NCBI RefSeq assembly: GCF_039654945.1
Contig: NW_027361688.1
Coordinates: forward strand, 12,896,001-12,960,000
Length of the DNA stretch: 64,000 nt
DNA from: Dendrobates tinctorius
Taxonomy: Eukaryota
Reading direction: 5' to 3'
The notes below the pieces were generated by a model. The model was not told the DNA's origin and made no database searches. It saw only the letters and a program-made list of their open reading frames with translations. Each line of letters starts with the position of its first letter. Position 1 is the first letter of the stretch. Shown piece by piece: positions 29,658 through 59,594 of the stretch. The translations under genes were made by a program, and so were the position numbers.

Positions 29658-29683
29658 GTAAGTACGATCCCAAAAAAAAATAG

Positions 29684-35469: not shown

Positions 35470-35651
35470 ATGGCGCCCCCCTGGCTTTCCGCTCTTGGGT
35501 TTACCGTTCTTCCATCAGCAGGGAGCGCCATTTCACGGATTGGAATCGAAGAGCAAATGAAAACCTGGTACCCAACACTGCGGAGACCAAGCTGGTGCCC
35601 CCCAAGCTGGGTGTTTCCACCGGTCTGGGTGACTTTGCATACATCAATGGG
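35470..35651 (+). CDS. TSPO-like paralog (copy 2), first coding exon
   Basis: ttcAG acceptor at 35454, Kozak ACCATGG, 182 nt, MAPPWLSALGFTVLPSAG...WYPTLRRPSWCPPSWVFPPVWVTLHTSMG, GTGAGT donor. Confidence 0.93.
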
Positions 35652-35749
35652 GTGAGTATGTTTAGAAACGGGTGTGAGATCTAGAGGTGTATGAAGAAAG
35701 ACATAAAGGGATCCTCCAGGGAAAAGTGGTACACTGTATAGAAACGTGT

Positions 35750-36090
35750 TATCTGTCATTGTACAGGAGGGGGAGGAGGTGAGCTGTGACATCACCTAAT
35801 GTGAATGGTGGATCCTGTGTTATCTACTGTATATAGAGATGTTATCAGTCATTGTACAGGAGGGGGAGGAGGTGAGCTGTGACATCACCTAATGTGAATG
35901 GTGGATCCTGTGTTATCTACTATATATAGAGCTGTTATCAGTCATTGAACAGGAGGAGGAGGTGAGCTGTGACATCACCTATTGTGAATGATGGATTCTA
36001 TGTCATCTACTGTATATAGAGCTGTTATCAGTCATTGTACAGGAGGAGGTGAGCTGTGACATCACCTATTGTGAATGGTGGATCCTATGT
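35750..36090. repeat. ~88-bp satellite, continued at 46691-46800 after the DIRS insertion
   Basis: Unit gatcctatgt|tatctactgt is split by the DIRS element. Confidence 0.9.
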
Positions 36091-38078
36091 TTTTACCCTT
36101 CGCCACGACAGCACCCACTGGAGGTATAGGATCCGCCCCACTTGGAACAAGAAACCCTACAGGAAGATAAAAAGGGGCGGTCCGGCTTTCCTCCTCAGTT
36201 TTGGTTTTCAGTTCCCAGGGAACCTCAGGATGATCCTTCAGGAAGACGTACCTGGGCCATAGGCACGCCGCCTGCGCAGTGTCCATGAGAATGGCAGGGG
36301 CTGCGGTCTGGAAGCAGCATCGGGGGAGACTCTGTTAGACAGCTCCCCCCTCGTCTGATGGCTAAAGGTGATGTCCGGGAAGGGCCACCCGGTCTCACCT
36401 AGGGGCGCGCCAGGCGGCACCAAGCATGCAGGAGCCACCGCTGTGGGAAGCGGTAAGTGCGCCAGTGGCGCGAAGGAAAAAAAAAAGAGAGGCAGCGGTG
36501 GCGGCAGCGTCGGGAGAAGCGCGGGCCGCATACAAAAGCGGCGGCGCGGTAGCCGGCCGGCGCAGATGCTCCTAGGCCCCAGAAGTAATGAGTCAACTTC
36601 CGGGGCATGATGGCTGAGGAGTGCAACGGCGCATGCGCGGTAAACCCGGGGAGGAGGAGCGACTTTCGGGAGAAGAAAAAAAAAAAAAGATCTATTTAAA
36701 CCAGCGCCGCAGCTTAGCAGCAGGATGCCATGTCATCCCCAGCGGAAGTACACGCTCCAGCAGGAGACTCTGCGGGGGGCAGCTCCTCCAGGGACCGCGC
36801 TACCAGGACAGACACCGCCCGCAGGAGCGAGGCGGGAGAGTCAAGACCTAGGACAGGATCTCAGCCATCTGATCCGGTAATAAAAAGCTTCACTGGGTGA
36901 GTGTGCAATATATATACTCTGCCTATTAAGCTGACCTCTACCTCCCCCCTTCTCCTTCGCCATGTCTCCCCTCTTCCAGGCGAAGAAAAAATCCAAACAA
37001 AAAGAATGCGCTTTATGCGCTGAGCCTCTCCCTGACTCCTACCCCAAAAAGCTCTGTAAGCAATGCACCAGAGAGCCTAGACAAGGGTCGGCAGTGTCTT
37101 CAAAGGACATTCGGGCCATAATTAGGGAGGAAATACAAGCTATCACCCGTGCCTGTACTCCCTCAGAAGCTAGGAGCAAAAAACAGGTGACCATCAGCTC
37201 AGAGTCAGAGGAAGAACAGGGGATAATCTCTGATTCTTCACTCGCATCGTCGTCCTCATCATCATCAGACATGGAGGGACGATCTTGTTTTCCCCTGGAT
37301 AGTGTGGATAACCTAGTCAAATCCATGAGGAACACTATGGGGTGTGAGGAGACAAGGGGCCCCCAAACCGCACAAGAAATAATGTTTGCGGGGTTGGCGG
37401 AAAAGAAAAGGAGAGCGTTTCCAGTAATACCGACAGTAAAGCCCTAATAAAGAGAGAGTGGGAAAAACACGATCAAAGAAGTTTTCTCCCATCGGCCTCC
37501 AAGAGGAAGTATCCATTTAGCGATGACGAGCTGTTAAAATGGACCAAAGTTCCAAAGGTTGATGCCGTTGCAGCCTCTACCTCGAAGCAGTCTACTATTC
37601 CGGTAGAGGACGCAGGCTTATTGGCGGACCCGCTAGACCGTAAAGCGGAGTCATCATTAAAAAGGTCTTGGGAGTCTACCACAGGGATTTTTAAGCCAGC
37701 AGTAGCCAGCACATGCACCGCCAGGTCTATGCTCATATGGTTGGACCAATTAGATCAACAAATCGAGCAGAAGGTGTCTAGGGGAAAACTACGGGCCGCT
37801 ATTCCATTAATTAAAGGGGCGGCAGCCTTCATGGCCGATGCATCGGCAGACACCCTACGGCTGGCAACGAGACCGGATGGTCTTGTACACAACGCCAGGC
37901 GGGCGCTATGGATGAAGAGCTGGAAGGGGGACGCGCAATCAAAATCTAAGATTTGCGCAACCCCGTGCGAGGGGGAGTTTCTCTTTGGGAAAGCCCTAGA
38001 TGACATACTTGCCAAAGCGAAAGAAAGGAAGAAGGCCTTCCCTGATCCTTCTATCCCTTTCTACAGGAGAACCTTTAA

Positions 38079-41000
38079 CCCCTTCACTACCAAGGGTGGT
38101 TTGCACATTAACTACCGGGCCAATTTTTACAATTCTGACCACTGTACCTTTATGAGGTCATAACTCTGGAACGCTTTCATGGATCCCGGTGATTCTGACA
38201 TTGTTTTCTCGTGACATATTGTACTTCATGTTAGTGGTAAAATTGCATTCAAATAACTTGCATTTATTTGTGAAAAAAACGGAAATTTGGCGAAAATTTT
38301 GAAAATTTCGCAATTTTCCAACTTTGAATTTTTATGCCCTTAAATCACAGCGATACGGCACACAAAAAACTTAATACATAACATTTCCCACATGTTTACT
38401 TTACATCAGCACAATTTTGGAACCAAAATTTTTTTTTGTTAGGAAGTTATAAGGGTTAAAAATTGACCAGCGATTTCTCATTTTTGCAACACCATTTTAT
38501 TTTTAGGGACCACTTCACATTTGAAGCCACTTTGAGGGGTCTATATGATAGAAAATACCCAAAAGTGACACCATTCTAAAAACTGCACCCCTTAAGGTGC
38601 TTAAAACCACATTCAAGAAGTTTATTAACCCTTTAGGTGCGTCACAGGAATTTTTTGAATATTAAAAAAAAAAATGAACATTTAACTTTTTTTCACAAAA
38701 AAAATACTTCAGGTTCAATTCTCTTTATTTTACCAAGGGTAACAGGAGAAATTGGACTGCAAAAGTTATTGTGCAATTTGTCCTGAGTACGCTGATACCT
38801 GATATGTGGGGGGGAACCACTGTTTCGGCGCATGGCAGAGCTCAGAATGGAAGGAGCGCTGTTTGACTTTTTCAATGCAAAATTGGCTGGAATTCAGATC
38901 GGACGCCATGTCACGTTTGGCGAGCCCCTGATGTACCTAAACAGTGGAAACCCCCCCAAGTGACCCCATTTTGGAAACTAGACCCCCCAAGGAACTTATC
39001 TAGATATGTGGTGAGAACTTTGAACCCACAAGGGCTTCACAGAAGTTTATAACGTACAGCAGTACAATTAAAAAATCATATTTTTTCCACAAAAATGATC
39101 TTTTCACCCTCAATTTTTATTTTTCCAAGGGTAACAGGACCCTAAAAGTTATTGTGCAATTTGTCCTGAGTACGCTGATACCCCATATGTGGGTGTAAAT
39201 GACTATTTGGGCGCATAGCAGAGCTCGGAAGGGAAGCAGCGCCATTTGACGTTTTTGGCTAGAATTGAGATCGGACACCATGTCGCGTTAGGAAAGCCCC
39301 TGATGTACCAAAACAGTAGAAACCCCCCACAAATGACACCATTTTGGAAACTAGACCCCCCAAGGAACTTATCTAGATGTGTGGTGAGCACTTTGAACCC
39401 CCCAGTGCTTCACTGAAGTTTATAACGTCCGGGCGTGAAAATAAAAAAATCGTATTTTTTCCACAAACATGATCTTTTAGTCCCCATTTTTTTATTTTCC
39501 CAAGGGTAACAGGAGAAATTGGACCCCAAAAGTTGTTGTCCAATTTGTCCTGAGTATGCTGATACCTCATATGTGGGAGAAAACTACTGTATGGGCACAC
39601 GTCGGGGCTCGGAAGGGAAGTAGTGACGTTTTGGAATGCAGACTTTGATGGAATGGTCTGCGGGTGTCATGTTGCGTTTGGAGAGCCCCTGATGTACCTA
39701 AACAGTGGAAACCCCCCACAAGTGACCCCATTTTGGAAACTAGACCCCCTACTGAACTTATCTAGATGTGTGGTGAGCACTTTGAACCCCCCAGTGCTTC
39801 ACAGAAGTTTATAACGCCTGGGCGTGAAAATAAAAAAAACATTTTTTTCCGCAAAATTATATTTTTGCCCCCAATTTTTTATTTTCCTAAGGGTAACAGG
39901 AGAAATTGGACCCCAAAAGTTGTTTTGTAATTTGTCCTGAGTAGGCTGATACCCTACATGTGGGGGTAAAACACTGTTTGGGCACATGGCAGAGCTTGGA
40001 AGGGAAGGAGCACCATTTGACTTTTTCAACGCAGAATTGGCTGGAATTGAGATCAGACGCCATGTTGCCTTTGGAGAGCACCTGATGTGCCCAAACAGTG
40101 GAAACCCCCAATTATAACTCCAACCCTAACCTCAACACACCCCTAACCNNNNNNNNNNNNNNNNNNNNNNNNNNNNNNNNNNNNNNNNNNNNNNNNNNNN
40201 NNNNNNNNNNNNNNNNNNNNNNNNNNNNNNNNNNNNNNNNNNNNNNNNNNNNNNNNNNNNNNNNNNNNNNNNNNNNNNNNNNNNNNNNNNNNNNNNNNNN
40301 NNNNNNNNNNNNNNNNNNNNNNAAATACATTTTCTTTTAGTTTTATTATTTTTCCCTAACTAAGGGGGTGATAACGGGGGGGTTTGATTTACGATTTATG
40401 GCGGTTTTTATGTTTGGCGGCTGTCGCACGCTAAAAGACGCTTTTTATTGTAAAAATAGTTTTTGCATCACCACATATTGTGAGCTATAATTTTTCCGTA
40501 TTTTGACCCACCGAGTCATGTGAGGTCTTATTTTTTGCGGGACGAGTTGACGTTTTTATTGGTACCATTTTCGGGCACGTGACATTTTTTGATTGCTTTT
40601 TATTCCGATTTTTGGGACGCAGAATGAACAAAAACCAGCGTTTCATGAATTTCTTTTGGGGGGTGCGTTTACACCGTTCCGCCTGCAGTAAAATTGATAA
40701 CGCGTTTTTATTCTTCGGGTCAGTACGGTTACAGCGATACCTCATTTAGGTCGTTTTTTTATGTTTTGTCGGTTTTTTGCAATGAAAACAATTTTATATA
40801 AAAAATAATTATTTTTGTATCGCTTTATTCTGCGAGCTATAACTTTTTTATTTTTTTGCGGATGATGCTGTATGGTGGCTCGTTTTTTGCGGGACAAGAT
40901 GACTTTTTCAGCGGTACCATGGATATTTATATGCGTCTTTTTGATCGCGCGTTATTGCACTTTTTGTTCGGTGGTATGATAATAAATCATTATTTTTTGC

Positions 41001-41764
41001 TTCGTTTTTTATTTTTATTTTTTAAGGGGTTCACTAAAGGGGTTAACTAATGGGACAGTTTTATAGGGCAGGTCATTACGGACGCGGCGATACCAAATAT
41101 GTGTACTTTTATTGTTTTTGTTTTTTTTATTTTGAAAAAATGGATTTATTGGGGAATATTTTTTTTTTTTTTAATTTATTTAGTGATTTTTTTTTTAATT
41201 ATTTTTAACACTTTTTTTTTTTTTTTTTACTTTATTACCTTGTCCCAGGTGGGACATCACTGTCCTGTGACAGATCGCTGATCTGTCACATCACAGATCA
41301 CTGTGACAGATCAGCGATCTGTCACAGGCACTGCTGCAGACTTCCTCATGCCTGCGCTTTGCAGGCAGTGAGGAAGTCAGCTCCCTGCAGGCCCCCGTCG
41401 CCATCTTGGATCCGGGGGCCTGTAGGGAAAGAGCCCCCCGCAGCAGCGCTGCACATTGCGCTGCCGTGGGGGGCTCAGGGAAGCACGGAGGGAGCCCCCT
41501 CCCTGCCGATGCTTCCCTTTAACCCCCGGTACACCGCTATCGCGTTTGATCGCGGTGTGCAAGGGGTTAACGTGTCGGGGGCGGTCCGTGACCGCCCCTG
41601 ACACATTGTGCCGGGTGTCAGCTATGATAATTAGCTGACACTCGGCCGCGATCAGTGGCGCTCACCACGTGGGCGCCGCTGATCGCGATGACGTAATATT
41701 CCGTCCATGGTAATTAGGTCCATGGTCACATGGACGGAATATTACGTCAATTGTAGGTAAGGGG
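38079..41764. mobile_element. piggyBac-type non-autonomous DNA transposon with internal tandem ~360-420-bp repeats (spans a gap)
   Basis: TTAA|CCCCTT ... AAGGGG|TTAA; removing it restores gag ...FYRRTF-KRRPFERRR...KENKY*. Confidence 0.85.
40149..40322. other. Assembly gap (N run)
   Basis: N characters. Confidence 1.
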
Positions 41765-42051
41765 TTAAAAGGCGACCGTTTGAAAGAAGGAGACAAGCGG
41801 AGAGATCAAATAGATGGCCCACGAAGGAGGAAAAGCAAAAGGGTAGCATGTTTAGAGGTTCAACATTCCGAAAGGAAAATAAATACTAAAAAATGAGTCC
41901 TCCCGGTAAGGGGTAGATTAAAATTTTTTTCTTCAAAATGGGAACAAATAACTTCGAGTCCATGGATCCTAAATTTAATTAAAGAGGGAATAAAAATAGA
42001 ATTTCTTCAAATCCCTTATAATTTCTTTATCATAACCCGCCTTAACTCTAT

Positions 42052-43620
42052 AGTAGAATCATAGAATCGTAGAGTTGGAAGGGACCTCCTGGGCCATCTG
42101 GTCCAACCCCCTGCTCAAAGCAGGATTCGCTAAATCATCCCAGTCAGATGTCTGTCCAGCCTCTGTTTGAAGACTTCCATTGAAGGAGAACTCACCACTT
42201 CTCGTGGCAGCCTGTTCCACTCATTGATCACTCTAACTGTCAAAAAGTTTTTTCTAATATCTAATCTGTGTCTCCTCCCATTCAGTTTCATCCCATTGCT
42301 TCTAGTCTTTCCTTGTGCAAATGAGAATAAAGTTGATCCTTCTACAATGTGACAGCCCTTTAGATATTTGTAGACAGCTATTAAGTCTCCTCTCAGTCTT
42401 CTCTTTTGCAAACTAAACATTCCCAAATCCTGCAACCTTTCCTCATAAGACAGGGTTTGCAGACCGGTCACCATTCTGGTCGCTCTTTTCTGAACTTGCT
42501 CCAGTTTGTTGATGTCTTTTTTAAAATGTGGTGCCCAAAACTGGACACAATATTCCAGATGAGGTCTGACCAAAGAGGAGTAGAGGGAAATAATGACTTC
42601 ACGTGATCTAGACTGTATGCTTCTGTTAATACATCCTAGAATTGCATTTGCCTTTTTTGCTGCTGCATCACACTGTTGACTCATATTCAGTCTGTGATCT
42701 ATTAGTATACCCAAGTCTTTTTCACATGTGCTGTCACATAGCCCTATTCCTCCCATTCTATATATGCTTTTTCCATTTTTATTGCCCAGATGTAGTACTT
42801 TGCATTTCTCCCTGTTAAAAACCATTCTGTTAGTTGCTGCCCACTTCTCCAGTTTATTTAAATCTTTTTGAATCCTCTCTCTCTCTTCTCTAGTATTAGC
42901 TATCCCTCCTAGCTTTGTGTCATCAGCAAATTTAATCAGTTTACCCTCAATTCCTTCATCTAAATCGTTGATAAAGATGTTGAACAATACAGGGCCCAGG
43001 ACAGAGCCCTGTGGTACCCCACTTGAGACATTCTTCCAACTGGATGTGCAGCCATTTACAACCACTCTTTGGGTCCGATCACTAAGCCAGTTATGAATCC
43101 ACCTAACAGTTGCCTTGTCCATTCCATACTTAATCATTTTTTCAATAAGGATTGTATGAGAGACTTTGTCAAATGCTTTGCTGAAGTCAAGATATACTAT
43201 ATCTACAGCATTTCCTTGATCCACCCAATCAGTGATACCGTCATAGAAGGAAATTAAGTTAGTCTGACATGACTTATTAGTTACAAACCCATGCTGACTC
43301 TGTTTAATCACTTCATTCTTATCCAGGTATTGACATACATGTTGTTTAATAATTTGTTCAAAGATCTTTCCTGGTATAGAAGTCAGACTCACCGGCCTAT
43401 AGTTACCTGGGTCCACCTTCTTCCCCTTTTTGAAGATAGGAACAACATTTGCTCTTCTCCAGTCTTCTGGCACTTCTCCTGTTCTCCAAGAATTTTCAAA
43501 GATTATAGAGAGGGGTTCAAAAATTTCTTCTGCTATCTCCTTCAGTACTCTGGGGTGTAATTCATCTGGACCTGGAGACTTGAATTCATTTAGGCTAGCT
43601 TAGTGTTTCCTCACTATCTA
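42052..43620 (-). mobile_element. 5'-truncated CR1 LINE with an open RT-domain ORF (42130-43473)
   Basis: PGNYRPVSLTS, LDFSKAFD, GVPQGSVLGP, KFADD motifs; (attctatg)-type 3' tail at ~42052-42073; interrupts the DIRS RT. Confidence 0.95.
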
Positions 43621-44765
43621 AACTAAAGGCCCTCGAAGTACAAATTCAGAGCCTACTATCCAAGGGGGTTTTAGCAGAAGTCCCAGAGGGACAAGAGGGT
43701 AGAGGCTTCTACTCTCCTTTATTTTTAATTTCCAAACCAGACGGTACGTTTAGGACAATTATAAATTTAAGGAAACTTAATACGTTTATAAAAAATAAGT
43801 TTAAAATGGAATCAATCAGATCCACCATAAAACTTCTCTTTCCAATCTGTGTAATGGCGGGGATTGACTTGAAGGATGCTTACTATCATGTTCCTATTCA
43901 TGATAGATACCAAAGGTACCTAAGGGTCGCGGTGGTTTTCGAAGGCAAGATCCGTCATTTTCAGTATACGGCCATGCCTTTCGGCTTCACCAAAGTGATG
44001 GCAGAGGTGATGGCCTATCTTCGTCAGAAAGACACTCTAATCGTGCCTTATCTGGATGACTTCTTAATTATCGGGAACTCGGTCACCCAGTGTACCAGAC
44101 GTGTGGCTGACGCTGTCTCATCTTTGCAGGATCTAGGCTGGATCATCAACTTCCAGAAGTCCAGACTCGTTCCGCGTTCCCTTCAGATGTTCTTAGGATT
44201 CCAGTTAGACTCCACAACCCAGAGATGCCTACTCCCTCAGGTAAAAATTACACTCACAAAAGAGAAGGTGGAGGTAGCCATAAATAGACCACGTATGTCT
44301 CTGAGAGGGGCAATGTCGCTATTGAGGTCGCTCTCTTCCTGTGCCCCGGCAGTCCAGTGGGCCCATTATCACGTCCGCACACTGCAGCATCAGATCCTCC
44401 GAGAGGACAAGCGACATAGTGGTCACCTCGAGAGCAAGATAACCTTGTCACAGGAGGTCTTGGCTTCTCTAGAATGGTGGCTAGATGATAACCATCTGTC
44501 CACAGGAGTCCCATGGGTCATAGTACCATCTTGTATCCTAACCACCATTGCTAGCCCCCACGGCTTGGGAGCCCATATGGGGAATAGCTTTTGTCAAGGA
44601 AGGTGGAATGGAGATGAACTAGGCTACTCATCTAATCTAAAAGAACTGACGGCGGTATATAATGCTCTACACCATTTTCTTCCACAGCTCCAACGGAAGC
44701 ATGTCAGGATCTTATCGGACAACACCACTACAGTGGCCTACATAAACAGACAGGGAGGTACTTGA
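43620..44765 (+). pseudogene. DIRS reverse transcriptase / RNase H
   Basis: GFYSPLFL, IDLKDAYYHVPI, YLDDFLI, SDNTTTVAYINRQGGT; frameshift and premature stop. Confidence 0.9.
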
Positions 44766-45203
44766 TCAGAGACTCTGATGTCTTCTGCGGCAAGAATCTT
44801 AAACTTAGCCGAAAGTTATTTGTTGTCCCTCTCGGCCCTCCATATCAGGGGAGAGAACAACCAGGAGGCAGACTTCTTAAGCCGACACACACTTCGACAA
44901 GGGGAGTGGTGCCTCAATCGCCGAATCTTCAAGGACATAGTAGCTCTATGGGGGCAACCTCAGATGGACCTCTTTGCCACGAAAAAGAACAGACAGATAA
45001 AAGCGTTTGCCTCCCTGTCCCCATCAGATCATCCAGACATATTGGACGCCCTCCAGGCCTCATGGAAGTTCAACCTGGCATATGCCTTCCCTCCGATAAT
45101 TCTCCCACCACAGGTCATTCGGAAGATCAGAGAGGACAAGGCGAGAGTAATTTTGATAGCACCATTCTGGCTCAAGAGACCTTGATTCTCATGGCTACGA
45201 ATT

Positions 45204-46339
45204 ATGTCGGTTACAGATCCGTGGGTTCTCCCTTCGATTCCCAACCTACTCTCCCAAGGCCCTTTTCTCCACCACCCAGGTGGACAGCTTACACTTGACG
45301 GCGTGGAATTTGAAAGGCAGCTACTAAGATCGAGGGGGTTTTCTGAAACACTAATTGCTACGCTCCTACAGAGCAGGAAGCAATCCACTACCCAAATTTA
45401 TACAAAGATATGGAAAAAATTCCTGCAGTTTCATACAGCGCCTCATACCACAGAAGTTCCGATAGTTCCTATCTTGGAATTTCTACAGAAAGGGAAGGAC
45501 TTGGGCCTGGCAGTAAACACGCTGAAAGTCCAAGTGTCTGCATTAGGCGCACTGTACGGCCATAATGTAGCAGGAAATAAGTGGATATCACGATTCATTA
45601 CAGCTTGCGAACGGATAACTCCGGTTCACATACCTGCAATCCCGGCATGGGACTTAAATCTGGTCTTAGACGCTCTTATGGAAGAACCCTTCGAGCCGAT
45701 AGACACGATATCCCTGAAATACTTGTCACTCAAAACGGCCCTCTTAGTGGCACTGACGTCGGCTAGGAGAGTGAGTGATATCCAAGCCTTAGCCATAGAC
45801 CCACCCTTTTTTCAGATATACCAGGATAGGTTAATATTAAAACCAGACCCCTCATACCTGCCTAAGGTATCAACAAGGTTCCATAGATCTCAAGAGATAC
45901 TTCTCCCGACCTTCTTTGGAGACCCCTTCACTCCGGAGGAGTGGAAATTCCACACTTTGGACGTTAGAAGAACTGTCCTAAAATATATTGAGAGGTCCAG
46001 GAGCTGGAGGCAGTGTAGGGCTCTGTTCATATCTTTTCAGGGCTGTAAAAAAGGGTACGGAGTCACGAAGAGCACCTTTCCCGATGGATCAGGGATGCCA
46101 TTCGCTTAGCCTACTCCGCGAAAAATGAAGAGCCTCCGGAGAACATCAGAGCACATTCCTCCAGAGCAGCGGCAACCTCCTGGGCCGAGAGGGGAGACGT
46201 TCCGATTGAAGCCATATGTAAGGCAGCAATTTGGTCAACCCCTTCTACCTTCTATAATCACTATAGACTTGACCTTTCATCAACTTCTGACCTAAGTTTT
46301 GGCAGGACTGTCCTTGGCATGGTGGTCCCACCCAGGTGA
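45204..46339 (+). pseudogene. DIRS tyrosine recombinase (one frameshift near 46080)
   Basis: LVALTSARRVSDIQAL, HTLDVRR, RAHSSRA, FYNHYRLD. Confidence 0.9.
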
Positions 46340-47065
46340 TAGTCTCTGGAATCTCTCCAGTGGGTGCTGTCGTGGCGAAGGGTAAAAAGCCGGATTACTT
46401 ACCGGTAATGCTCTTTTAATGAGTCCACGACAGCACCCGCTCACTACCCTCCCTGCTAAGATATCAATTAGAAAGTGTATCTGCTAAGGATGAATATGTA
46501 AAAATTAGTAAAACAAAGACATTGCCTAACCTTTGGCGGTCCTCCTGGTACTCTGAAATACAAAAGTAAGGCGGACCGCCCCTTTTTATCTTCCTGTAGG
46601 GTTTCCTGTTCTAAGTGGGGCGGATCCGATACCTCCAGTGGGTGCTGTCATGGACTCATTAAAAGAGCATTACCGGTAAGTAATCCGGCTTATCTACTGT
46701 ATATAGAGCTGTTATCAGTCATTGTATAGGATGGGGAGGAGGTGAGCTGTGACATCACCTATTGTGAATGGTGGATCCTGTGTTATCTCCTGTATATATT
46801 GTAAATCTGCATGATATGATAATGAGACTACTGAAAAGTCTTTTGTACAGAACAGGAAGTGTGAGTCTAGTGTGAGGACTAGTGAGAAGATCGCAATGTT
46901 TCGAAATGTTTTTTCTTTATGTATAGTCAAATGACAAAAAATATAACAAATGAAAAAAAAAATCAGACGGGATGATTTATGCTCAGATTGTTCCTTTAAG
47001 AACGAAGACTCGACTTATTTATTTTGAACACTCTTCTTATTTTGATTCTTTTACCTTTTTTTCAG

Positions 47066-47204
47066 ATACGGATCTTATTTGATTTGGAAAGAGTTGGGAG
47101 GATTTACTAAAGACGCAGTGGTGCCTCTTGGGGTATATGGCACGTACCTGGCTCTGAACTGGTCGTGGATTCGAGTTTTTTTGGGCGCCCACAAAATGAA
47201 ACTG
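47066..47204 (+). CDS. TSPO-like copy 2, second coding exon
   Basis: 139 nt, AG/GT; YGSYLIWKELGGFTKDAVVPLGVYGTYLALNWSWIRVFLGAHKMKL. Confidence 0.93.
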
Positions 47205-47219
47205 GTAATTTAGAATTAA

Positions 47220-48425
47220 CCCCTTAAACCCCCCCTTAGCTTTTTTCGGAATTGCATTTCCGTTTTTTTTGCTCTCCTCCTTCCCAGAGCCATATTTTTA
47301 ATTTTACCGTCACTGTGGCCATGTGAGGGTTTATTTTTTGCGGGACGAGTTGTACTTTTGAACGACGCCATTAGTTTTACCATGTCGTGTACTAGAAAAC
47401 AGGGGAAAAAAATTCCAAGTGCGGTGAAATTAAAAAAAAAAAAGTGCAATCCCACAATTGTTTTTTGTTTGGCTTTTTTGCTGGGTTTACTAAATGCTAA
47501 AACTGACCTGCCATTATGATTCTCCCGGTCATTACGAGTTCATAGACACCAAACATGTCTAGGTCCTTTTTTTTTATCTAAGTGGTGAAAAAAAATTCCA
47601 AACTTTGCTAAAAAAAAGAAAAAAATGGCGCAATTTTCTGAGACCTGTTGCGTCTCCATTTTTCGTGATCTCTGGTTGGTTGAGGGCTTATTTTTTGCGC
47701 ACCGAGCTGACGAATTTAGTGATACCATTTTGGTGTAGATACGATCTTTTGATCGCCCATTATTGCATTTTAATGCAGTGTTGCAGTGACCAAAAAAACA
47801 ATTCTGACGTTTTGATTTTTTTTCCCGCTACGCCGTTTAGCGATGAGGTTAATCCTTTTTTTTATTGACTGGCGATTCTGAACGCGGCGATACCAAATAT
47901 GTCTATGTTTGATTTTATTTTTATTGTTTTATTTTGAATGACTCAAAAGATTTTTAAACTTTTTTTTTTTTTTTTTTTACTTTTGCCATGCTTCAATAGT
48001 CTCCATAGGAGAATAGAAGCTGGCACAACTCGATCGGCTCAGCTACATAGAGGCAATAAGCAGACCACTGCGTGACCCTCACAGCAAGCCGACACTGACA
48101 ACCATAGAGGTCTCCAGGAGACCTCGGGTTGTCATGCCGACAAACCGATGTCCCGCGATCACGTGACGCAGGTCATTGGTGTGCGTACTTCCCGCACAAT
48201 TGCCGGAAGCGCCATTTAAATGCCGCTGTGAGCGTTTGACAGCGGCATTTAACTAGTTAATAGCCGCGGGTGGATCGCAATTCCACCCGCGGCTATTGCG
48301 GGCACATGTCAGCTGTTCAAAACAGCTGACATGTCCCGGGAAAGATGTGGGCTTACCGCCGGAGCCCACATCAAAGGGAGGGATACCGACATCGGCGTAC
48401 TATTACGCCCGATGACGGTAAGGGG
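47220..48425. mobile_element. piggyBac-type TTAA MITE
   Basis: TTAA|CCCCTT ... AAGGGG|TTAA; an empty site is visible at the paralogous position in copy 3 (~57659). Confidence 0.85.
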
Positions 48426-48444
48426 TTAAATTCTGAAATTTAGA

Positions 48445-49080
48445 GTACAGAGCATCGCAGCTATGATAGAAAGGAGTCGGGACACCCAGGTCATGACAGC
48501 TATCATAGAAAGGAGTCAGAACGCGCAGAGCATCGCAACTATGATAGAAAGGAGTCTTGACACGCAGAGCATCGCAGCTATGATAGAAAGGAGTCAGGAC
48601 ACGCAGAGCATCACAGCTATGATAGAAAAGAGTCAGGACACGCAGAGCATCGCAGCTATGATAGAAAGGAGTCTTGACACGCAGAGCATCACAGCTATGA
48701 TAAAAAGGATTCAGGACACGCAGAGCATCACAGCTATGATAGAAAAGAGTCAGGACACGCAGAGCATCGCAGCTATGATAGAAAGGAGTCTTGACACGCA
48801 GAGCATCACAGCTATGATAAAAAGGATTCAGGACACGCAGAGCATCACAGCTATGATAGAAAAGAGTCAGGACACGCAGAGCATCGCAGCTATGATAGAA
48901 AGGAGTCAGGACACGCAGAGCATTGCAGCTATGATAGAAAGGAGTCAGGACATGCAGAGCATTGCAGCTATGATAGAAAGGAGTCTTGACACGCAGAGCA
49001 TCGCGGCTATGATAAAAAGGAGTCAGGACACGCAGGGCATCGCAGCTATGAAAGGAGTCAGAACATTCAGGGCATCACAA
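48445..49080. repeat. 39-bp minisatellite (gagcatcgcagctatgatagaaaggagtcaggacacgca)
   Basis: Tandem units; explains ORF 48463..49221. Confidence 0.95.
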
Positions 49081-49267
49081 CATGCTGTGCATCTACAGTC
49101 TGTTGATAGTGCATTGTTGAGCTTTCGGAAACATTTATTGTTTGAACTACTTATGCGGCTTTTGTTCAGTATGCTATGGACAAATCTTAAATACTGGCAA
49201 TGTCACGGTCACTTTCAATAGTGTGTCAATAGTGATGTGCTTATATATTGTATAATTTTTATTACAG

Positions 49268-49444
49268 GCGTTTTTCCAAAGTGTTCTGATGACCGGATCC
49301 GCAGCCGCTACGGTTGTCGTCTGGTTCCCCATTAATAGAACAGCCGCCTGCCTGATGTCCCCCACTGTTGCTTGGTTGTCACTGGCCACTGCCTGGAGCT
49401 ATTGGTTTTGGAGGAACAACCTAGACAAGGAAAAACAGAAGTGA
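49268..49444 (+). CDS. TSPO-like copy 2, last coding exon (protein 165 aa)
   Basis: tacAG acceptor; AFFQSVLMTGSAAATVVVWFPINRTAACLMSPTVAWLSLATAWSYWFWRNNLDKEKQK*; AATAAA at 49717. Confidence 0.93.
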   Translation, partial: AFFQSVLMTGSAAATVVVWFPINRTAACLMSPTVAWLSLATAWSYWFWRNNLDKEKQK

Positions 49445-54016: not shown

Positions 54017-54198
54017 ATGATGCCCCCCTGGCTTCCAGCTGTTGGGTTCACCATCCTCCCATCAGTAGGGAGCGCCATTGGACAGATTGGAACAGGCGAG
54101 CAAATGAACACCTGGTTTGTGACACTGCGGAAACCAAGATGGGCCCCTCCAAACTGGGTGTTCCCACCGGTATGGGCAACATTAAATACGTCAGTGGG
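54017..54198 (+). CDS. TSPO-like paralog (copy 3), first coding exon
   Basis: Acceptor at 54001-02, ACCATG, 182 nt, MMPPWLPAVGFTILPSVG...WFVTLRKPRWAPPNWVFPPVWATLNTSVG, GTGAGT donor. Confidence 0.93.
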
Positions 54199-54266
54199 GT
54201 GAGTGCGTTGTGAAACTGGAGTGGGATCCACAAATATACGAACAAAGACTTAAAGGGACACTGTGT

Positions 54267-55690
54267 GATTGTACAGGAGGAGGAGGAGGTGAGCTGTGAC
54301 ATCACCTACTGTGAATGGTGGATCCTATGTTATCTACTGTATATAGAGGGGTTATCAGTCATTGTATAGGAGGAGGAGGTGAGCTGTGATATCACCTGTT
54401 GTGAATAGTGGATCCTATGTTATCTACTGTATATAGAGGTGTTATCAGTCATTGTATAGGAGGAGGAGGAGGAGGTGAGCTGTGACATCACCTATTGTGA
54501 ATGGTGGATCCTGTGTTGTCTACTGTATATAGAGGTGTTATCAGTCATTGTACAGGAGGAGGAGGAGGAGGTGAGCTGTGACATCACCTATTGTGAATGG
54601 TGAATCCTGTGTTATCTACTGTATATAGAGGTGTTATCAGTCATTGTACAGGAGGAGGAGGTGAGCTGTGACATCACCTATTGTGAATGGTGAATCCTGT
54701 GTTATCTACTGTATATAGAGGTGTTATCAGTCATTGTATAGGAGGAGGAGGAGGTGAGCTGTGATATCACCTGTTGTGAATAGTGGATCCTGTGTTATCT
54801 ACTGTATATAGAGGGGTTATTAGTCATTGAACAGGAGGAGGAGGTGAGCTGTGACATCACCTATTGTGAATGGTGGATCCTGTGTTGGCTACTGTATATA
54901 GAGGTGTTATCAGTCATTGTACAGGAGGAGGAGGAGGTGAGCTGTGACATCACCTATTGTGAATGGTGAATCCTGTGTTATCTACTGTATATAGAGGTGT
55001 TATCAGTCATTGTATAGGAGGAGGAGGAGGAGGTGAGCTGTGACATCACCTATTGTGAATGGTGGATCCTGTGTTATCTACTGTATATAGAGGGGTTATC
55101 AGTCATTGTACAGGAGGAGGTGAGCTGTGACATCACCTATTGTGATTTGGTGGATCCTATGTTATCTACTGTATATAGAGGTGTTATCAGTCATTGTATA
55201 GGAGGAGGTGAGCTGTGACATCACCTACTGTGAATGGTGGATCCTGTGTTATCTACTGCATATAGAGGTGTTATCAGTCATTGTATAGGAGGAGGAGGTG
55301 AGCTGTGACATCACCTATTGTGAATGGTGAATCCTGTGTTATATACTGTATACTGAGGTATTATCAGTCATTGTACAGGAGGAGGAGGTGAGCTGTGACA
55401 TCACCTATTGTGAATGTTGGATCCTATGTTATCTACTGTATATAGAGGTGTTATCAGTCATTGCACAGGAGGGGGAGGAGGTGAGCTGTGACATCACCTA
55501 TTGTGAATGGTGGATCCTGTGTTATCTACTGTATATAGAGGTGTTATCAGTCATTGTACAGGAGGGGGAGGAGGTGAGCTGTGACATCACCTATTGTGAA
55601 TGGTGGATCCTGTGCTATCTACTGTATATAGAGGTGTTATCAGTCATTGTACAGGAGGGGGAGGAGGTGAGCTGTGACATCACCTATTGT
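54267..55690. repeat. ~88-bp satellite array
   Basis: About 16 units, in the same position relative to the exon as in copy 2. Confidence 0.95.
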
Positions 55691-56094
55691 GCTTTATATA
55701 CTCTATATATAGTTGTAGTCAAAAGTTTTGAGACTGACACAAATTTAGGTTTTTACACTTTGCTGCTTCAGTGTTTTTAGATCTTTAGTCGGATGTTTCT
55801 ACAGTTACTGGGGTACAATTATAAACATTTCAGGCTTTTTTTAAACTTTTATTCACAAATACATTAACGTTTATGGAAAAACTCAATAGTTACATCGTCA
55901 ACCATTTTTTTTTCAGAGTTCGGCTCTTTGCCCCGGCAGCTGGGTATCGGCTTCTGGGGCAAATCCTGACTGATGACCGCCCGTTCTTGTCTCATCAGTG
56001 CTTGGAGGTTTTAACAATTTGTGTTACTTTGTCGTTTTTTGAGAATCAACCACAAGTTCTCTATGGGATTGAGATCTGGGCAGCCTTCTGGTCG

Positions 56095-57205
56095 TTTTAA
56101 TGAAAGACTACACTACACACAGTGTTTAAAGCTTTATTATACTCCTAATCCCATATCGAAGCCATCGTTCTCCTGTAAAAAATTATAAAACAATAAACCA
56201 ACAATATACATACGTGTCCGGCGATCAGTCACGTCCCACGGCGTAATCCATCTCAGGGGTTAATCAGTTTACAGCCGGAGCGCTGCTGATGCGACCGCTC
56301 CAACTGTAAACTACAGGGGAATGAAGGTGAAGCAGCGCGCACAGGCTCAGTGACGTCACCGCTAGTTACAGAGCATGCACCGGCTGCTTCTATTCATTCC
56401 CCAGTAGTTTACAGTCGGAGCGGTTGCATTAGCAGCGCTGCGGCTGTAAACTGATTAACCCCCGACATGGATTTACACCGTGGGACGTGACTGAGCGCCG
56501 GACAGGTATGGATATTGTTGGTTTATTATTTTATAATTTTTTACAGGAGAACGATGGCTTCGATATGGAATTAGGAGTATAATAAAGCTTTAAATACTGT
56601 GTGTAGTGTAGTCTTTCATTAAAATACTTCGTTCTTATTGTGTGTATGTATTCATTTAACCCGTGAATAATTCTAGACTTAGTAATGGAGAGGTGTCTTA
56701 TTGACACCTCTCCATTACTAATCTGGGCTTATACAATAGAAAGGTGACATTAACCCCTTATTAACCCCACTTGCCACCGCTACAGGGCAAGTGGGAAGAA
56801 CCCTATAAAGCCCCCCAGAATAGGCGCATCTAATAGATGCACCTTTTCTGGGAAGCTGTGGGCTGCTGTTTTTAGGCTGTGGGGAGCCAAGATCAATGAG
56901 AATAGCAGCCCCCAGTTGTGATTTTTGCTGGGTTGGTTCACAAACAGAAGGGGACCCCACGTTGGGTTTTCATTCATTCTTTCTCTCCTGCTCGCTGTTG
57001 CCGGCAGAGCAGGAGAGAAGAATGACAGCCGCGTTCAGCACCAGCCGCCGGGGAACAGCGCTTAATGTAGCGCTTCTTCCCCAGCGGCCGTCCGTGTGGT
57101 CCTGATGCGGCACACGGTTGCCACACGGATGTACCACGTATCCACATGGACAGCTCCGGTACCGTTTTTTCCGGTACCGGAATTATCTGGACTTGTGAGA
57201 CTGCC
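56095..57205. mobile_element. Non-autonomous element with a ~230-bp inverted duplication (56095-56325 / 56393-56624)
   Basis: Arms are reverse complements; related to 25200-26620. Confidence 0.6.
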
Positions 57206-57506
57206 CTTACAACCTCCAGGCTGCTCTAATAATTCAGTCACTATGACAGAGTGATATCAGCTGCCTTGTCCTTGTTAACCCTTTCTTCTGTGCTAATGAG
57301 AAAATCACTGAAATGGTGTCAGCAGGTCATTTTGTGGCGAGGAACGTTAATAAATAGAAAAAAGTGGAAAACCCTTTTAAGGCCTACAAAACAAATCAGA
57401 CAATATAAATTTTCTGCCCGTATTATTTTTTTTAAGACCGAAGGCTTTTTATAAATTTTTCTCTTTTAATATTCTACTTGTATTGATTAATTTTTATCTT
57501 TTTCAG

Positions 57507-57645
57507 ATACAGCTCTTATTTGATTTGGAAAGAGTTGGGAGGATTTACTAAAGACGCCGTAGTGCCTCTTGGGGTATATTCCACGTACCTAGCGTTGACC
57601 TGGTCATGGAGTCAAGTTTTTTTTGGTGCCCATAAAATTAAGCTG
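57507..57645 (+). CDS. TSPO-like copy 3, second coding exon
   Basis: 139 nt, AG/GT; YSSYLIWKELGGFTKDAVVPLGVYSTYLALTWSWSQVFFGAHKIKL. Confidence 0.93.
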
Positions 57646-57749
57646 GTAATTCTCTAAATTAATGTCTGAAATTCAGAGCACAGTTGGCGTCCAGTCACTA
57701 GGACAGACCCTTTCAGTAAGAACAGGAATTACACGACTCAACGATCACA

Positions 57750-59240
57750 TGGTGCTATGATATACAGGAATCCGGACACGCAGAGCATCACAGCTATGAT
57801 AGAAAGGAGTCAGGGCGCACACAGCATCACAGCTATGATAGTAAGGAGTCATTACACGCAGAGCATTGCAGGTGTAATAGAAAGGAGCCAGCACATGCAA
57901 AGCATCGCAGCTATGATAGAAAGGAGTCAGGACACGCAGAGCATCACAGCTATGATAGAAAGGAGTCAGGGCGCACACAGCATCGCAGCTATGATAGAAA
58001 GGAGTCAGGACACAGAGCATCACAGCTATGATAGAAAGGAGTCAGAACACACAGTGCACCACAGCTATGATAGAAAGGATTCAGGATACCCAGGGAATCA
58101 CAGCGATGAGAGAAAAGAGTCAGGACACCTAGGACATCACAGTTATGGGAGAAAGGAGTCAGGACACGCTGAGCATCGCAGCTATGATAGAAAGCAGTCA
58201 GGTTCTACTTGCTGGAGCGTATTCATGTTTTTTGGTAATTATATCATACATATGTCTGTGTCATGCAGGATCAGGTTTATGTACCACTTGTTATAAGCAC
58301 GGGACCTTGGATGATGTGTTCTTGTCATTGCAGTTTTTAATAGTGTTTTATTATGCATGTGTCTTTTTGTGGTCTGTTATTTGAATAAAATTATTGTTAT
58401 ATATTTTTCTCATATCAAGGTGTGTGCTATTCTTATACATTGGTCTTTCCCCTTGTTTTTGTTCATGCTATTTGCACAATGCATTACACAGCACCCTATT
58501 AGCTAATATTACCTTATTGGTAGTGCACATATTACATTTACTGTTTAGAAAGGAGTCAGGACACGCTGAGCATCACAGCTATGATAGAAAAAAGTCAGGA
58601 CACGCTGAGCATCACAGCTATGATAGAAAAGAGTCAGGACACGCAGAGCATTGCAGCTATGATAGAAAGGAGTCAGGACACGCTGAGCATCACAGCTATG
58701 ATAGAAAGGAGTCAGGACACGCAGAGCATCACAGCTATCAGAAAGGAGTCAGGACACGCAGAGCATTGCAGCTATGATAGAAAGGAGTCAGGACACGCTG
58801 AGCATCACAGCTATGATAGAAAGGAGTCAGGACACACAGAGCATTGCAGCTATGATAGAAAGGAGTCAGGACACGCTGAGCATCACAGCTATGATAGAAA
58901 GGAGTCAGGACACGCTGAGCATCGCAGCTATGATAGAAAGGAGTCAGGACACGCTGAGCATCGCAGCTATGATAGAAAGGAGTCAGGACACGCTGAGCAT
59001 CACAGCTATGATAGAAAGGAGTCAGGACACGCTGAGCATCGCAGCTATGATAGAAAGGAGTCAGGACACGCAGAGCATTGCAGCTATGATAGAAAGGAGT
59101 CAGGACACGCTGAGCATTGCAGCTATGATAGAAAGGAGTCAGGACACGCTGAGCATCACAGCTACGATAGAAAGGAGTCAGGACACGCTGAGCATCACAG
59201 CTATCATAGAAAAGAGTCAGGACACGCAGAGCATTGCAGC
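57750..59240. repeat. 39-bp minisatellite in two blocks (57750-58200, 58545-59240)
   Basis: Same unit as 48445-49080. Confidence 0.93.
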
Positions 59241-59423
59241 ATGCTGTGTATCTACAGACTGTTCTTAATGCATTGTGAAGCTTTAGGTGAAATTTATAGT
59301 TTGTCCCACATATGAGTACAAGTCCCAAACACTTTCAAATTGCTGGTTGTAATGTCAGGATTTCCTCAATAGTTTGTGTATGCCATTTTGCGCATCTATA
59401 ATTTTACTGGTTTTTTTCTACAG

Positions 59424-59594
59424 GCATTTTTCCAATCTGTTCTTACGACCGGAATCGCAGCTGCTACAGTTGTCATCTGGTGCCCCATTAACAGAACGGC
59501 CGCCTACCTGATGGCCCCCACTGTTCCTTGGATGATAATAGAAACTGTCTGGAGCTATCGGTATTGGAAGGACAACCTAGACAAGACAAAATAG
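59424..59594 (+). CDS. TSPO-like copy 3, last coding exon (protein 163 aa)
   Basis: ctacAG acceptor; AFFQSVLTTGIAAATVVIWCPINRTAAYLMAPTVPWMIIETVWSYRYWKDNLDKTK*; AATAAA at 59803 and 59887. Confidence 0.93.
   Translation, partial: AFFQSVLTTGIAAATVVIWCPINRTAAYLMAPTVPWMIIETVWSYRYWKDNLDKTK

What the first reader, a model, noticed from the sequence alone, without database searches (positions are those of the whole stretch)
35470..59594. Both paralogs share a rewritten ligand/cholesterol pocket
Copies 2 and 3 are colinear with human TSPO numbering. Relative to copy 1 and human they share changes at normally conserved sites: Y57H/N, Q88Y, P97R/Q, W107L, acidic 111 to Q, Y140T, L150W and N151S. W53, W95, W143 and Y152 are kept. 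From my recollection of the mouse TSPO structure, W107, A147 and L150 line the PK11195 cavity, and L150-Y152-R156 form the CRAC cholesterol motif. The reciprocal W107L/L150W swap looks like repacking of the cavity rather than decay (inference).
Basis: partly seen in the sequence, partly recalled or inferred. Interest (0 to 1): 0.72.

Follow-up and report, generated by a model that had tools for sequence, protein, structure and literature searches.

The report
Diverged TSPO paralogs of poison frogs
Next to the ordinary TSPO gene, this poison-frog (Dendrobates tinctorius) window carries two intact extra TSPO copies, one shown here to be transcribed, in which several almost never-changing residues of the ligand cavity and dimer face have been replaced step by step over tens of millions of years, so they are probably working proteins with a changed binding specificity, not decaying duplicates.

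Summary
Copy 2 (35470-49444) and copy 3 (54017-59594) are intact three-exon TSPO genes. The N gap lies inside intron 1 of copy 2, and the spliced protein equals RefSeq XP_073423807.1.

- **Not decay:** dN/dS is below 1. 35-38 of 45 family-conserved sites are kept. AlphaFold gives confident TSPO folds. Copy 3 is spliced exactly as modelled in four public runs.
- **Conserved sites:** Y57, Q88, P97, Y140 and L150 are 97-98% conserved in 64 other TSPOs, and copy 3 also has A147E. W107 is not a conserved site, because Leu is as common as Trp.
- **The 'swap':** L107 is present in all six clade members, including the túngara frog. W150 occurs only in Dendrobates and Ranitomeya. The two changes were therefore not one concerted swap.
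- **Beyond the pocket:** Q88, P97 and G87T lie on the TM3 dimer face, not in the pocket. A formal CRAC motif survives in both copies.

The clade is older than chemical defence and is already auto-annotated as 'translocator protein-like'. No ligand is known, and I found no paper on it. It is a new variant of a known kind and of moderate interest. The scan also noted this array as s1-389102.

The parts
29479..31017 (+). Copy 1, the canonical TSPO (TSPO1 orthologue), 162 aa. Exons are 29479-29657, 30539-30677 and 30847-31017.
   Evidence: It is 88% identical to Rana TSPO and sits inside the anuran TSPO1 clade. None of the 45 family-conserved sites is changed.
35470..35651 (+). Copy 2 exon 1 (residues 1-61, TM1 to TM2). 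Carries Y57H at 35638-35640.
   Evidence: The donor is GTGAGT.
40149..40322 (.). Assembly gap inside intron 1 of copy 2. It is not in coding sequence.
   Evidence: The spliced protein equals XP_073423807.1.
42133..46106 (.). Retrotransposon remnants (reverse transcriptase and RNase H ORFs) that inflate intron 1 of copy 2.
   Evidence: RVT_1 at 1e-35 and 2e-13, plus RT_RNaseH.
46650..46675 (+). Alternative first exon of copy 2 isoform X2 (MDSLKEHYR), which would give a 113-aa protein lacking TM1 and most of TM2.
   Evidence: XP_073423808.1.
47066..47204 (+). Copy 2 exon 2 (TM2 end to TM3). Carries G87T, Q88Y, P97R, F100L, K106 and L107.
49268..49444 (+). Copy 2 exon 3 (TM4 to TM5). Carries Q111, T140, A147, W150, S151, Y152 and R156.
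54017..54198 (+). Copy 3 exon 1. The RefSeq start is 54017 and a second ATG is at 54020. Carries Y34F, Y57N and M60V.
   Evidence: The spliced joint 54197>57506 is seen in runs X1, X6 and X17.
57507..57645 (+). Copy 3 exon 2. Carries G87T, Q88Y, N92T, P97Q, K106 and L107.
   Evidence: The spliced joint 57644>59423 is seen in all four runs.
59424..59594 (+). Copy 3 exon 3. Carries Q111, T140, A142P, E147, V149, W150, S151, Y152 and K156.
   Evidence: The protein is identical to XP_073423813.1.
11611..12102 (-). Exon of an acyl-transferase-domain gene (MCAT-like), placed head-to-head with copy 1. It marks the ancestral TSPO locus.
   Evidence: Acyl_transf_1, 37.5 bits. That MCAT neighbours TSPO in human is from my own recollection.

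Best explanation
Copies 2 and 3 belong to a frog-specific 'TSPO-like' subfamily. It most likely arose by tandem duplication of TSPO1 before dendrobatoid and leptodactylid frogs split, and it duplicated again as a DNA segment within dendrobatid poison frogs.

The proteins keep the five-helix TspO/MBR fold, the tryptophan core (W33, W42, W53, W93, W95, W143, W155) and a formal CRAC motif.

They replaced otherwise near-invariant residues in steps:
- First L84V, P97Q and Y140T, together with G19S, K106, L107 and S151.
- Then Q88Y/H, G87T and E111Q.
- Then Y57N/H.
- Last L150W, and in the copy-3 lineage also A147E, N92T and M60V.

These sites lie in the central cavity (Y57, Y140, A147, L150, N92, F100) and on the TM3 GxxxG dimer face (L84, G87, Q88, P97).

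Inferred mechanism: like mammalian TSPO2, these are membrane sterol- or tetrapyrrole-type binding proteins. Their cavity specificity and oligomerisation have shifted away from TSPO1. The classical PK11195-type drug site is probably weakened, most of all in copy 3, which has Glu at 147.

Shown here: the gene structures, the conservation pattern, the order of changes, purifying selection, and transcription and splicing of copy 3.

Inferred only: the ligand change, the membrane location and the physiological role.
For: - **Intact genes:** canonical splice sites and open reading frames.
- **Family and fold:** Pfam TspO_MBR at 139 and 133 bits. AlphaFold mean pLDDT 88.3 and 92.3 with five helices. 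Foldseek best hits are mouse, Rhodobacter and Bacillus TSPO structures, TM up to 0.82.
- **Clade:** Engystomops, Anomaloglossus, Phyllobates, Ranitomeya, copy 2 and copy 3 group with 100/100 support.
- **Linkage:** the paralogues sit beside TSPO1 in Dendrobates (the window), Ranitomeya (three TspO genes) and Engystomops.
- **Diagnostic sites:** 9 favour the TSPO1 state and 3 the TSPO2 state.
- **Segmental duplication:** flanks and introns of copies 2 and 3 align at 77-90%.
- **Selection:**
  - TSPO1, Dendrobates against Ranitomeya: dN/dS 0.048.
  - Copy 3 against its Ranitomeya orthologue: 0.27 (p = 1e-4 for omega < 1).
  - Copy 2 against copy 3: 0.49 (p = 0.005).
- **Conserved sites:** of 45 sites at least 90% conserved, 7 are changed in copy 2 and 10 in copy 3, against about 50% of variable sites (p = 6e-5 and 1e-3). 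The count rises from 3 (Engystomops) to 6, then 7 and 10.
- **New constraints:** V84, T140, Q97, K106, L107 and S19 are kept across the clade.
- **Cavity enrichment:** changed conserved sites are enriched in the crystal-based cavity list, 8/17 against 3/28, p = 0.011 (list from PMC6165245).
- **RNA:** contigs join copy 3's exons exactly at the predicted GT..AG borders. One run shows no mismatch. Three runs labelled as other organisms show mismatches, about 7% in X6 and X17.
- **Literature:**
  - PK11195 contacts (PMC6470738).
  - G87V makes mouse TSPO monomeric, and Y152 and R156 are needed for cholesterol binding (PMC5379104).
Against: - No ligand, location or tissue data exist. The runs are coded, so tissue is unknown.
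- The dN/dS of 0.27-0.53 is 5-10 times that of TSPO1 and could be plain relaxation.
- The cavity enrichment depends on which published model is used. With the NMR-model list it is absent (2/10 against 9/35).
- No coordinates of my own models were available, so side-chain orientation was not measured here.
- AlphaFold confidence is insensitive to point changes.
- The protein tree cannot place the clade. The AU test accepts it with anuran TSPO1 (p = 0.30) and with the TSPO2-type clade (p = 0.65, likelihood slightly higher).
- The RNA junction of copy 2's exon 1 to exon 2 across the gap-bearing intron was not tested.
- Copy 2 also has a predicted truncated isoform.
Confidence: 0.6

Rival explanations
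1. Relaxed constraint only. The duplicates are redundant, slowly degenerating copies of TSPO1 that are still open and transcribed, and the replaced 'invariant' residues are tolerated losses without any new specificity.
For: - dN/dS is 5-10 times higher than for TSPO1. Copy 2 against Phyllobates is 0.53, only marginally below 1 (p = 0.046).
- Sites 57, 88 and 97 were hit more than once.
- Copy 2 has a truncated predicted isoform X2.
- Differences from copy 1 are not enriched in the experimental cavity list.
Against: - The ORF is intact in at least six genes of five species across a split with dS of about 0.8-0.9.
- 35-38 of 45 conserved sites are kept.
- Clade-specific residues (V84, Q97, K106, L107, T140, S19) are themselves conserved.
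- Copy 3 is spliced correctly in four runs at appreciable contig depth.
- Each lineage retains a CRAC-compatible apolar residue by a different route, L146 or V149.
Confidence: 0.22
2. Poison-frog adaptation. The dendrobatid-specific changes (Y57N/H, L150W, A147E) and the extra duplication reshape the cavity to bind or buffer sequestered dietary alkaloids.
For: - The latest changes and the copy 2/copy 3 duplication are confined to dendrobatids.
- The number of conserved sites changed rises from 3 in Engystomops to 7-10 in Dendrobates.
- TSPO cavities do bind lipophilic heterocycles such as PK11195 (PMC6470738).
Against: - The subfamily, with L107, Q97, T140 and S151, already exists in the non-toxic Engystomops and in Anomaloglossus.
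- Phyllobates terribilis, a highly toxic species, keeps L150 and A147.
- No tissue information is available.
- No paper links TSPO with poison frogs.
Confidence: 0.08
3. The clade is the anuran orthologue of the ancient TSPO2-type paralogue (Latimeria and reptile TSPO2, salamander and caecilian 'TSPO-like'), relocated next to TSPO1. It would then not be a TSPO1 duplicate.
For: - K106-L107 is shared with sarcopterygian TSPO2-type proteins.
- The tree constrained to join the two clades has a log-likelihood 4 units higher than the free search (AU p = 0.65).
- No frog TSPO2-type protein appeared among the best 120 hits to Latimeria TSPO2, whereas salamanders and a caecilian did.
Against: - Adjacent to TSPO1 in three frog genera (window). 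TSPO1 and TSPO2-type genes lie on different large contigs in Pogona, Sphaerodactylus, Latimeria and Rhincodon (contig lengths).
- 9 of 12 diagnostic sites show the TSPO1 state.
- Engystomops TSPO-like is 61% identical to anuran TSPO1 but 52% to TSPO2-type.
- The long stem branch (0.38) invites long-branch attraction.
Confidence: 0.1

Closest known systems
TSPO / TSPO1 (18-kDa translocator protein, peripheral benzodiazepine receptor; mouse structure 2MGY)
   Same: - Same Pfam family and same three coding exons.
- Gapless alignment over residues 3-160, 44-45% identity.
- Five TM helices, the Trp core, Y152 with R/K156, and a formal CRAC motif.
- Genomic neighbour of the true TSPO1.
   Different: Near-invariant Y57, Q88, P97, Y140 and L150 are replaced, plus A147, N92 and M60 in copy 3 and F100 in copy 2. 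The GxxxG motif is G83xxxT87. The charged cavity-mouth residues R27, R43 and E111 are neutralised. Protein evolution is 5-10 times faster.
TSPO2 (erythroid paralogue of mammals and birds, and the wider TSPO2-type clade found here in reptiles, salamanders, caecilians, coelacanth and ray-finned fishes)
   Same: A second TSPO with altered drug-site residues. PMC6470738 reports that TSPO2 lacks A23, V26, W95 and W107 and does not bind PK11195 but keeps the cholesterol site. It shares K106-L107. It is a precedent for a TSPO duplicate that changes ligand specificity.
   Different: - Not in the TSPO2-type clade in the free tree.
- Tandem to TSPO1 rather than unlinked.
- Keeps W95, W42, W47 and V52 as in TSPO1.
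- Its hallmark changes (T140, Q97, Y88, W150) are not TSPO2 features.
Bacterial TspO (Rhodobacter sphaeroides 4UC1/8E7X, Bacillus cereus 4RYI)
   Same: Best structural matches to the model (TM 0.79-0.82). Same fold and same central porphyrin/heme cavity.
   Different: Only 19-28% identity. The bacterial proteins keep the equivalents of Y57, Y140, A147 and L150 that the frog paralogues have lost.
Other frog 'translocator protein-like' genes (Xenopus tropicalis P0088, Rhinophrynus P0099)
   Same: Lineage-specific extra TSPO copies in anurans.
   Different: These nest inside anuran TSPO1 and keep W107, Y57, Q88, Y140 and L150; Rhinophrynus also keeps P97 and N151. They are independent, conservative duplicates.

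Membership tests
TspO/MBR family (PF03073) | Significant match to the family profile over its full length | tested here: met
   139.4 bits (copy 2) and 132.7 bits (copy 3) against a cutoff of 24, covering profile positions 1-144 of 145.
TspO/MBR family (PF03073) | Five-transmembrane-helix bundle | tested here: met
   AlphaFold models have pLDDT 88.3 and 92.3 and five long helices. Foldseek E = 4e-7 to mouse and bacterial TSPO structures. This is prediction only.
TspO/MBR family (PF03073) | Conserved tryptophan-rich core (W33, W42, W53, W93, W95, W143, W155) | tested here: met
   All are present in both copies.
Vertebrate TSPO1 (functional definition) | CRAC cholesterol motif (L/V)-X1-5-Y-X1-5-(R/K) at the end of TM5 | tested here: met
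   copy 2 has L146-x5-Y152-x3-R156 and copy 3 has V149-x2-Y152-x3-K156. The canonical L150 itself is lost. Binding was not tested.
Vertebrate TSPO1 (functional definition) | Canonical PK11195/drug-site residues (W107, A147, L150 and others) and high-affinity PK11195 binding | tested here: not met
   Residues are L107 and W150 in both copies and E147 in copy 3. The contact list is from PMC6470738. Actual binding cannot be tested with these tools.
Vertebrate TSPO1 (functional definition) | G83xxxG87 dimerisation motif in TM3 | tested here: not met
   The motif reads G83-V-Y-G/S-T87 in both copies. G87V renders mouse TSPO monomeric (PMC5379104).
Vertebrate TSPO1 (orthology) | Placement inside the tetrapod TSPO1 clade | tested here: inconclusive
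   The free tree leaves the clade unplaced. The AU test does not reject a clade with anuran TSPO1 (p = 0.30). Tandem position and 9:3 diagnostic sites favour a TSPO1 origin.
TSPO2 | Membership of the TSPO2-type clade and an unlinked TSPO2 locus | tested here: inconclusive
   Not in the 100/100 TSPO2-type clade in the free tree, but the constrained tree is not rejected (p = 0.65). The locus criterion is not met, because the genes are tandem to TSPO1.
TSPO2 | Erythroid expression and cholesterol-redistribution function | not testable with these tools
   The sequencing runs are coded and carry no tissue information.

The most novel reading that the evidence does not exclude
Anurans lost the ancient TSPO2-type gene. 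Hyloid frogs then rebuilt a second, specialised TSPO from a tandem TSPO1 duplicate that converged on TSPO2-like K106-L107. In dendrobatid poison frogs this duplicate went on to replace the family's most invariant cavity residues (Y57, Y140, A147, L150), creating a TSPO with a new small-molecule specificity. That specificity could be relevant to handling lipophilic alkaloids or tetrapyrroles.
Probability: 0.15. Interest if true: 0.7.

Novelty: new variant of a known kind. Interest (0 to 1): 0.45.

Why it matters
TSPO is a major drug and PET-imaging target whose physiological ligand and function are still disputed. Natural paralogues have replaced residues that are 97-98% conserved from molluscs to mammals (Y57, Q88, P97, Y140, L150, and A147, the rs6971 site, which is 94% conserved), and they have stayed under selection. 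They are therefore a ready-made mutational series of 3, 6, 7 and 10 changes across living species. That series can be used to ask what these residues do for ligand, porphyrin and cholesterol binding and for dimerisation. If the dendrobatid-specific steps relate to alkaloid handling, that would add a new protein class to poison-frog toxin physiology, but nothing here shows it.

Tried and rejected
1. **Own cavity mapping.** Structure prediction returns no coordinates, so lipid-facing against cavity-facing could not be measured. I relied on published residue lists (PMC6470738, PMC6165245).
2. **Cavity enrichment of all differences from copy 1.** Not significant (p = 0.22 and 0.63). The NMR-model cavity list also shows no enrichment of changed conserved sites.
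3. **Placing the clade by phylogeny.** The free tree is unresolved, and AU tests reject neither a TSPO1 nor a TSPO2 affinity.
4. **Dating the copy 2/copy 3 duplication.**
   - The protein tree puts it after the Phyllobates split (96/88).
   - Synonymous distances suggest copy 2 is the orthologue of the Phyllobates gene. Copy 2-Phyllobates is 0.20 and copy 2-copy 3 is 0.34. The exon 1 third-position distances are 0.08 and 0.29.
   - The DNA tree is a polytomy.
   - So I cannot say whether W150 arose once, twice, or spread by gene conversion.
5. **An 'A147E carriers form one clade' constraint.** Not rejected (p = 0.30).
6. **Literature.** Searches for TSPO with poison frog or Dendrobat found nothing relevant. 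PMC4341906 is not held.
8. **Frog-wide distribution (Bufo, Hyla, Eleutherodactylus).** The word-based protein search showed none, but it is not exhaustive. The large representative search was not run, because its 50% clustering would merge these proteins with TSPO1.


Full report
**What is in the window.**
- A tblastn scan with copy 1's own protein, followed by inspection of splice sites, gives three + strand TSPO genes. Each has three coding exons, canonical GT..AG introns at identical positions and phases, and an intact ORF.
  - Copy 1: 29479-31017, 162 aa.
  - Copy 2: 35470-49444, 165 aa.
  - Copy 3: 54017/54020-59594, 163/162 aa.
- All three match Pfam TspO_MBR over its whole length, at 182, 139 and 133 bits.
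- Copy 3 is identical to RefSeq XP_073423813.1, and copy 2 to XP_073423807.1. Both are named 'translocator protein-like' in Dendrobates tinctorius, so the window is from that poison frog.
- An acyl-transferase (MCAT-like) exon lies head-to-head upstream of copy 1. By my recollection this is the arrangement of the human TSPO locus, so copy 1 sits at the ancestral position.

**The assembly gap.**
- The N run at 40149-40322 lies inside the 11.4-kb intron 1 of copy 2. It is 4.5 kb after exon 1 and 6.7 kb before exon 2, next to reverse-transcriptase ORFs.
- Copy 3's equivalent intron is 3.3 kb. The same roughly 90-bp repeat family sits just after exon 1 and just before exon 2 of copy 2, and also in copy 3's intron. 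This fits one intron enlarged by insertions.
- The three exons give a complete protein colinear with mouse TSPO, so no coding exon can be hidden in the gap.
- The exon 1-exon 2 junction of copy 2 was not checked against RNA here.
- A predicted isoform X2 starts at an alternative exon (46650-46675) and would lack TM1 and most of TM2.

**Check of the observation.**
- Every listed substitution is present at the codons given in the observation check: Y57H/N, Q88Y, P97R/Q, W107L, E111Q, Y140T, L150W and N151S. W53, W95, W143 and Y152 are kept.
  - G87T in the GxxxG motif and L84V, in both copies.
  - F100L in copy 2.
  - Y34F, M60V, N92T, A142P, A147E and R156K in copy 3.
  - Neutralisation of the charged cavity-mouth residues R27 and R43 in both copies.

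**How unusual the sites are.** I compared them with 64 other TSPO-family proteins, from molluscs, a spider and insects to mammals and including the TSPO2 type.

| Site | State in the 64 other TSPOs |
|---|---|
| Y57 | 98% |
| Q88 | 97% |
| P97 | 97% |
| Y140 | 98% |
| A147 | 94% |
| L150 | 98% |
| 111 | acidic in 80% |
| N151 | Asn in 66%, Thr in 28% |
| W107 | Trp in 45%, Leu in 47% |

- W107 is therefore not a conserved site. Leu 107 together with Leu 150 is the normal state of TSPO2-type proteins and of most shark TSPOs.
- Of 45 sites at least 90% conserved, the number changed is 0 in copy 1, 3 in Engystomops, 6 in Phyllobates and in Anomaloglossus, 7 in copy 2 and 10 in copy 3.

**Where the sites lie.**
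- My models come without coordinates, so I used published lists.
- PK11195 NOE contacts in mouse TSPO are A23, V26, L49, A50, I52, W107, A110, L114, A147 and L150. R46, W53, W95, D111 and W143 lie nearby (PMC6470738).
- PMC6165245 lists the same experimental cavity plus N151. Its model based on the Rhodobacter crystal structure adds Y57, N92, F99, F100 and Y140.
- The same paper lists Q88 in the TM3 dimer interface and describes the P97 side chain as pointing to that interface.
- PMC5379104 shows that G83xxxG87 mediates dimerisation, that G87V gives monomers, and that Y152 and R156 are needed for cholesterol binding.
- Changed conserved sites are enriched in the crystal-based cavity list (8/17 against 3/28, p = 0.011). 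They are not enriched in the NMR-model list (2/10 against 9/35).
- All differences from copy 1 are not enriched in the experimental cavity list.
- So 'rewritten pocket' is fair for residues 57, 140, 147 and 150 and model-dependent for 107 and 111. The dimer face is rewritten as well.
- A formal CRAC motif survives. Copy 2 uses L146, and copy 3 uses a new V149.

**Order of events.**
- The closest proteins are 'translocator protein-like' from Phyllobates terribilis, Ranitomeya variabilis and R. imitator, Anomaloglossus baeobatrachus and the túngara frog Engystomops pustulosus. With copies 2 and 3 they form a clade with 100/100 support and a long stem.
- Distribution of the changes:
  - V84, Q97, T/A140, S19, K106 and L107: all members. 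S151 in all but Anomaloglossus, which has C151.
  - Y/H88, T87 and Q/H111: dendrobatoids only.
  - N/H57: dendrobatids only.
  - W150: only copy 2, copy 3 and Ranitomeya.
- W107L and L150W are therefore separated by a long interval and are not a concerted swap.
- L150W is a single TTG>TGG step.
- Sites 57, 88 and 97 were each hit at least twice.
- Whether W150 arose once is open.
  - The protein tree places the copy 2/copy 3 duplication after the Phyllobates split.
  - Synonymous distances suggest copy 2 is the orthologue of the Phyllobates gene, which has L150. Copy 2-Phyllobates is 0.20, copy 3-Ranitomeya 0.205 and copy 2-copy 3 0.34.
  - The DNA tree is unresolved.

**Origin.**
- The clade is outside the well-supported TSPO2-type clade in the free tree.
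- AU tests reject neither a union with anuran TSPO1 (p = 0.30) nor one with the TSPO2 type (p = 0.65).
- Several observations favour a TSPO1 tandem duplicate that converged on K106-L107:
  - Adjacency to TSPO1 in Dendrobates, Ranitomeya (three tandem TspO genes) and Engystomops.
  - Nine TSPO1-state against three TSPO2-state diagnostic sites.
  - Higher identity to anuran TSPO1.
- Copies 2 and 3 themselves arose by a DNA-level segmental duplication that included flanks and introns.

**Working genes or decay?**
- Across the same species pair, TSPO1 has dN/dS 0.048. Copy 3 against its Ranitomeya orthologue has 0.27, which is below 1 at p = 1e-4, with 20 against 3 amino-acid-changing differences (p = 4e-4).
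- Copy 2 against copy 3 gives 0.49 (p = 0.005). Copy 2 against Phyllobates gives 0.53 (p = 0.046).
- Conserved sites are changed far less often than variable ones (p = 6e-5 and 1e-3).
- AlphaFold gives confident five-helix models, with pLDDT 88.3 and 92.3. These match the mouse and bacterial TSPO structures.
- Contigs of four public runs join copy 3's exons exactly at 54197>57506 and 57644>59423, with GT..AG ends. One run shows no mismatch. Three runs labelled as other organisms show mismatches, about 7% in X6 and X17. Spliced contigs show transcription. Tissue and expression level cannot be read from them.
- Together this argues for functional but faster-evolving genes. Copy 2 is the less constrained of the two.

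**Mechanism and comparison.**
- The best reading is a frog-specific TSPO subfamily analogous to TSPO2. It keeps the fold, the Trp core and a CRAC-type site, while the central cavity and the TM3 oligomerisation face have been altered.
- The published PK11195 contact residues at 107, 147 and 150 are changed, which suggests weakened classical drug binding. This is inference.
- The link to dietary or skin alkaloids is weak. The subfamily predates chemical defence, and the highly toxic Phyllobates keeps L150 and A147.
- No paper on these genes was found.
- The genes are already auto-annotated, so the novelty lies in the residue pattern and its stepwise history.

Noticed in passing
L002:4628-6763 (minus strand), Engystomops pustulosus: The TSPO1-like gene 3 kb from the Engystomops TSPO-like gene shows apparent frameshifts in exons 1 and 2 and is not among the called genes. 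This is either an assembly indel artefact or a disabled canonical TSPO in that species.
   Followed up: no
window:32500-34750: A roughly 93-bp minisatellite between copy 1 and copy 2 is open in several + strand frames for up to 443 codons (repeating GGYMGLIMGMGRLYGSYHGHGEAIWVLSWAW). It is probably non-coding tandem repeat.
   Followed up: no
window:48447-49079 and 57754-59240: The same 39-bp minisatellite family fills intron 2 of both copy 2 and copy 3. A roughly 90-bp repeat fills the start of intron 1 of both (35733-36091, 46690-46798, 54265-55691). Contigs of the four runs pile up at very high depth on 54.3-55.8 kb, so this repeat family is abundant in them.
   Followed up: partly
window:37348-38160 (+) and 18105-18719 (-): ORFs with a LAP2alpha-like domain (PF11560, E = 7e-15 for the first) lie beside reverse-transcriptase and gag ORFs (16964-17470, 21434-22324). 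They are probably part of a retrotransposon family present both upstream of copy 1 and in intron 1 of copy 2.
   Followed up: partly
window:9030-12102 (-), gap 12813-12980: Exons of an MCAT-like acyl-transferase gene lie head-to-head with TSPO copy 1. A second assembly gap lies just upstream of its first coding exon.
   Followed up: partly
Proteins P0088 (Xenopus tropicalis) and P0099 (Rhinophrynus dorsalis): Pipoid frogs (Xenopus, Rhinophrynus) have their own 'TSPO-like' genes that nest inside anuran TSPO1 and keep W107, Y57, Q88, Y140 and L150. No frog TSPO2-type protein appeared among the best hits to coelacanth TSPO2, although salamanders and a caecilian did. Anurans may have lost the TSPO2-type gene.
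   Followed up: partly
L001:2983-25052, Ranitomeya variabilis: Ranitomeya also has three tandem TspO genes, but the copy-3-like gene is second in the array. The third gene runs off the fetched locus, so gene order or copy content differs from Dendrobates.
   Followed up: no
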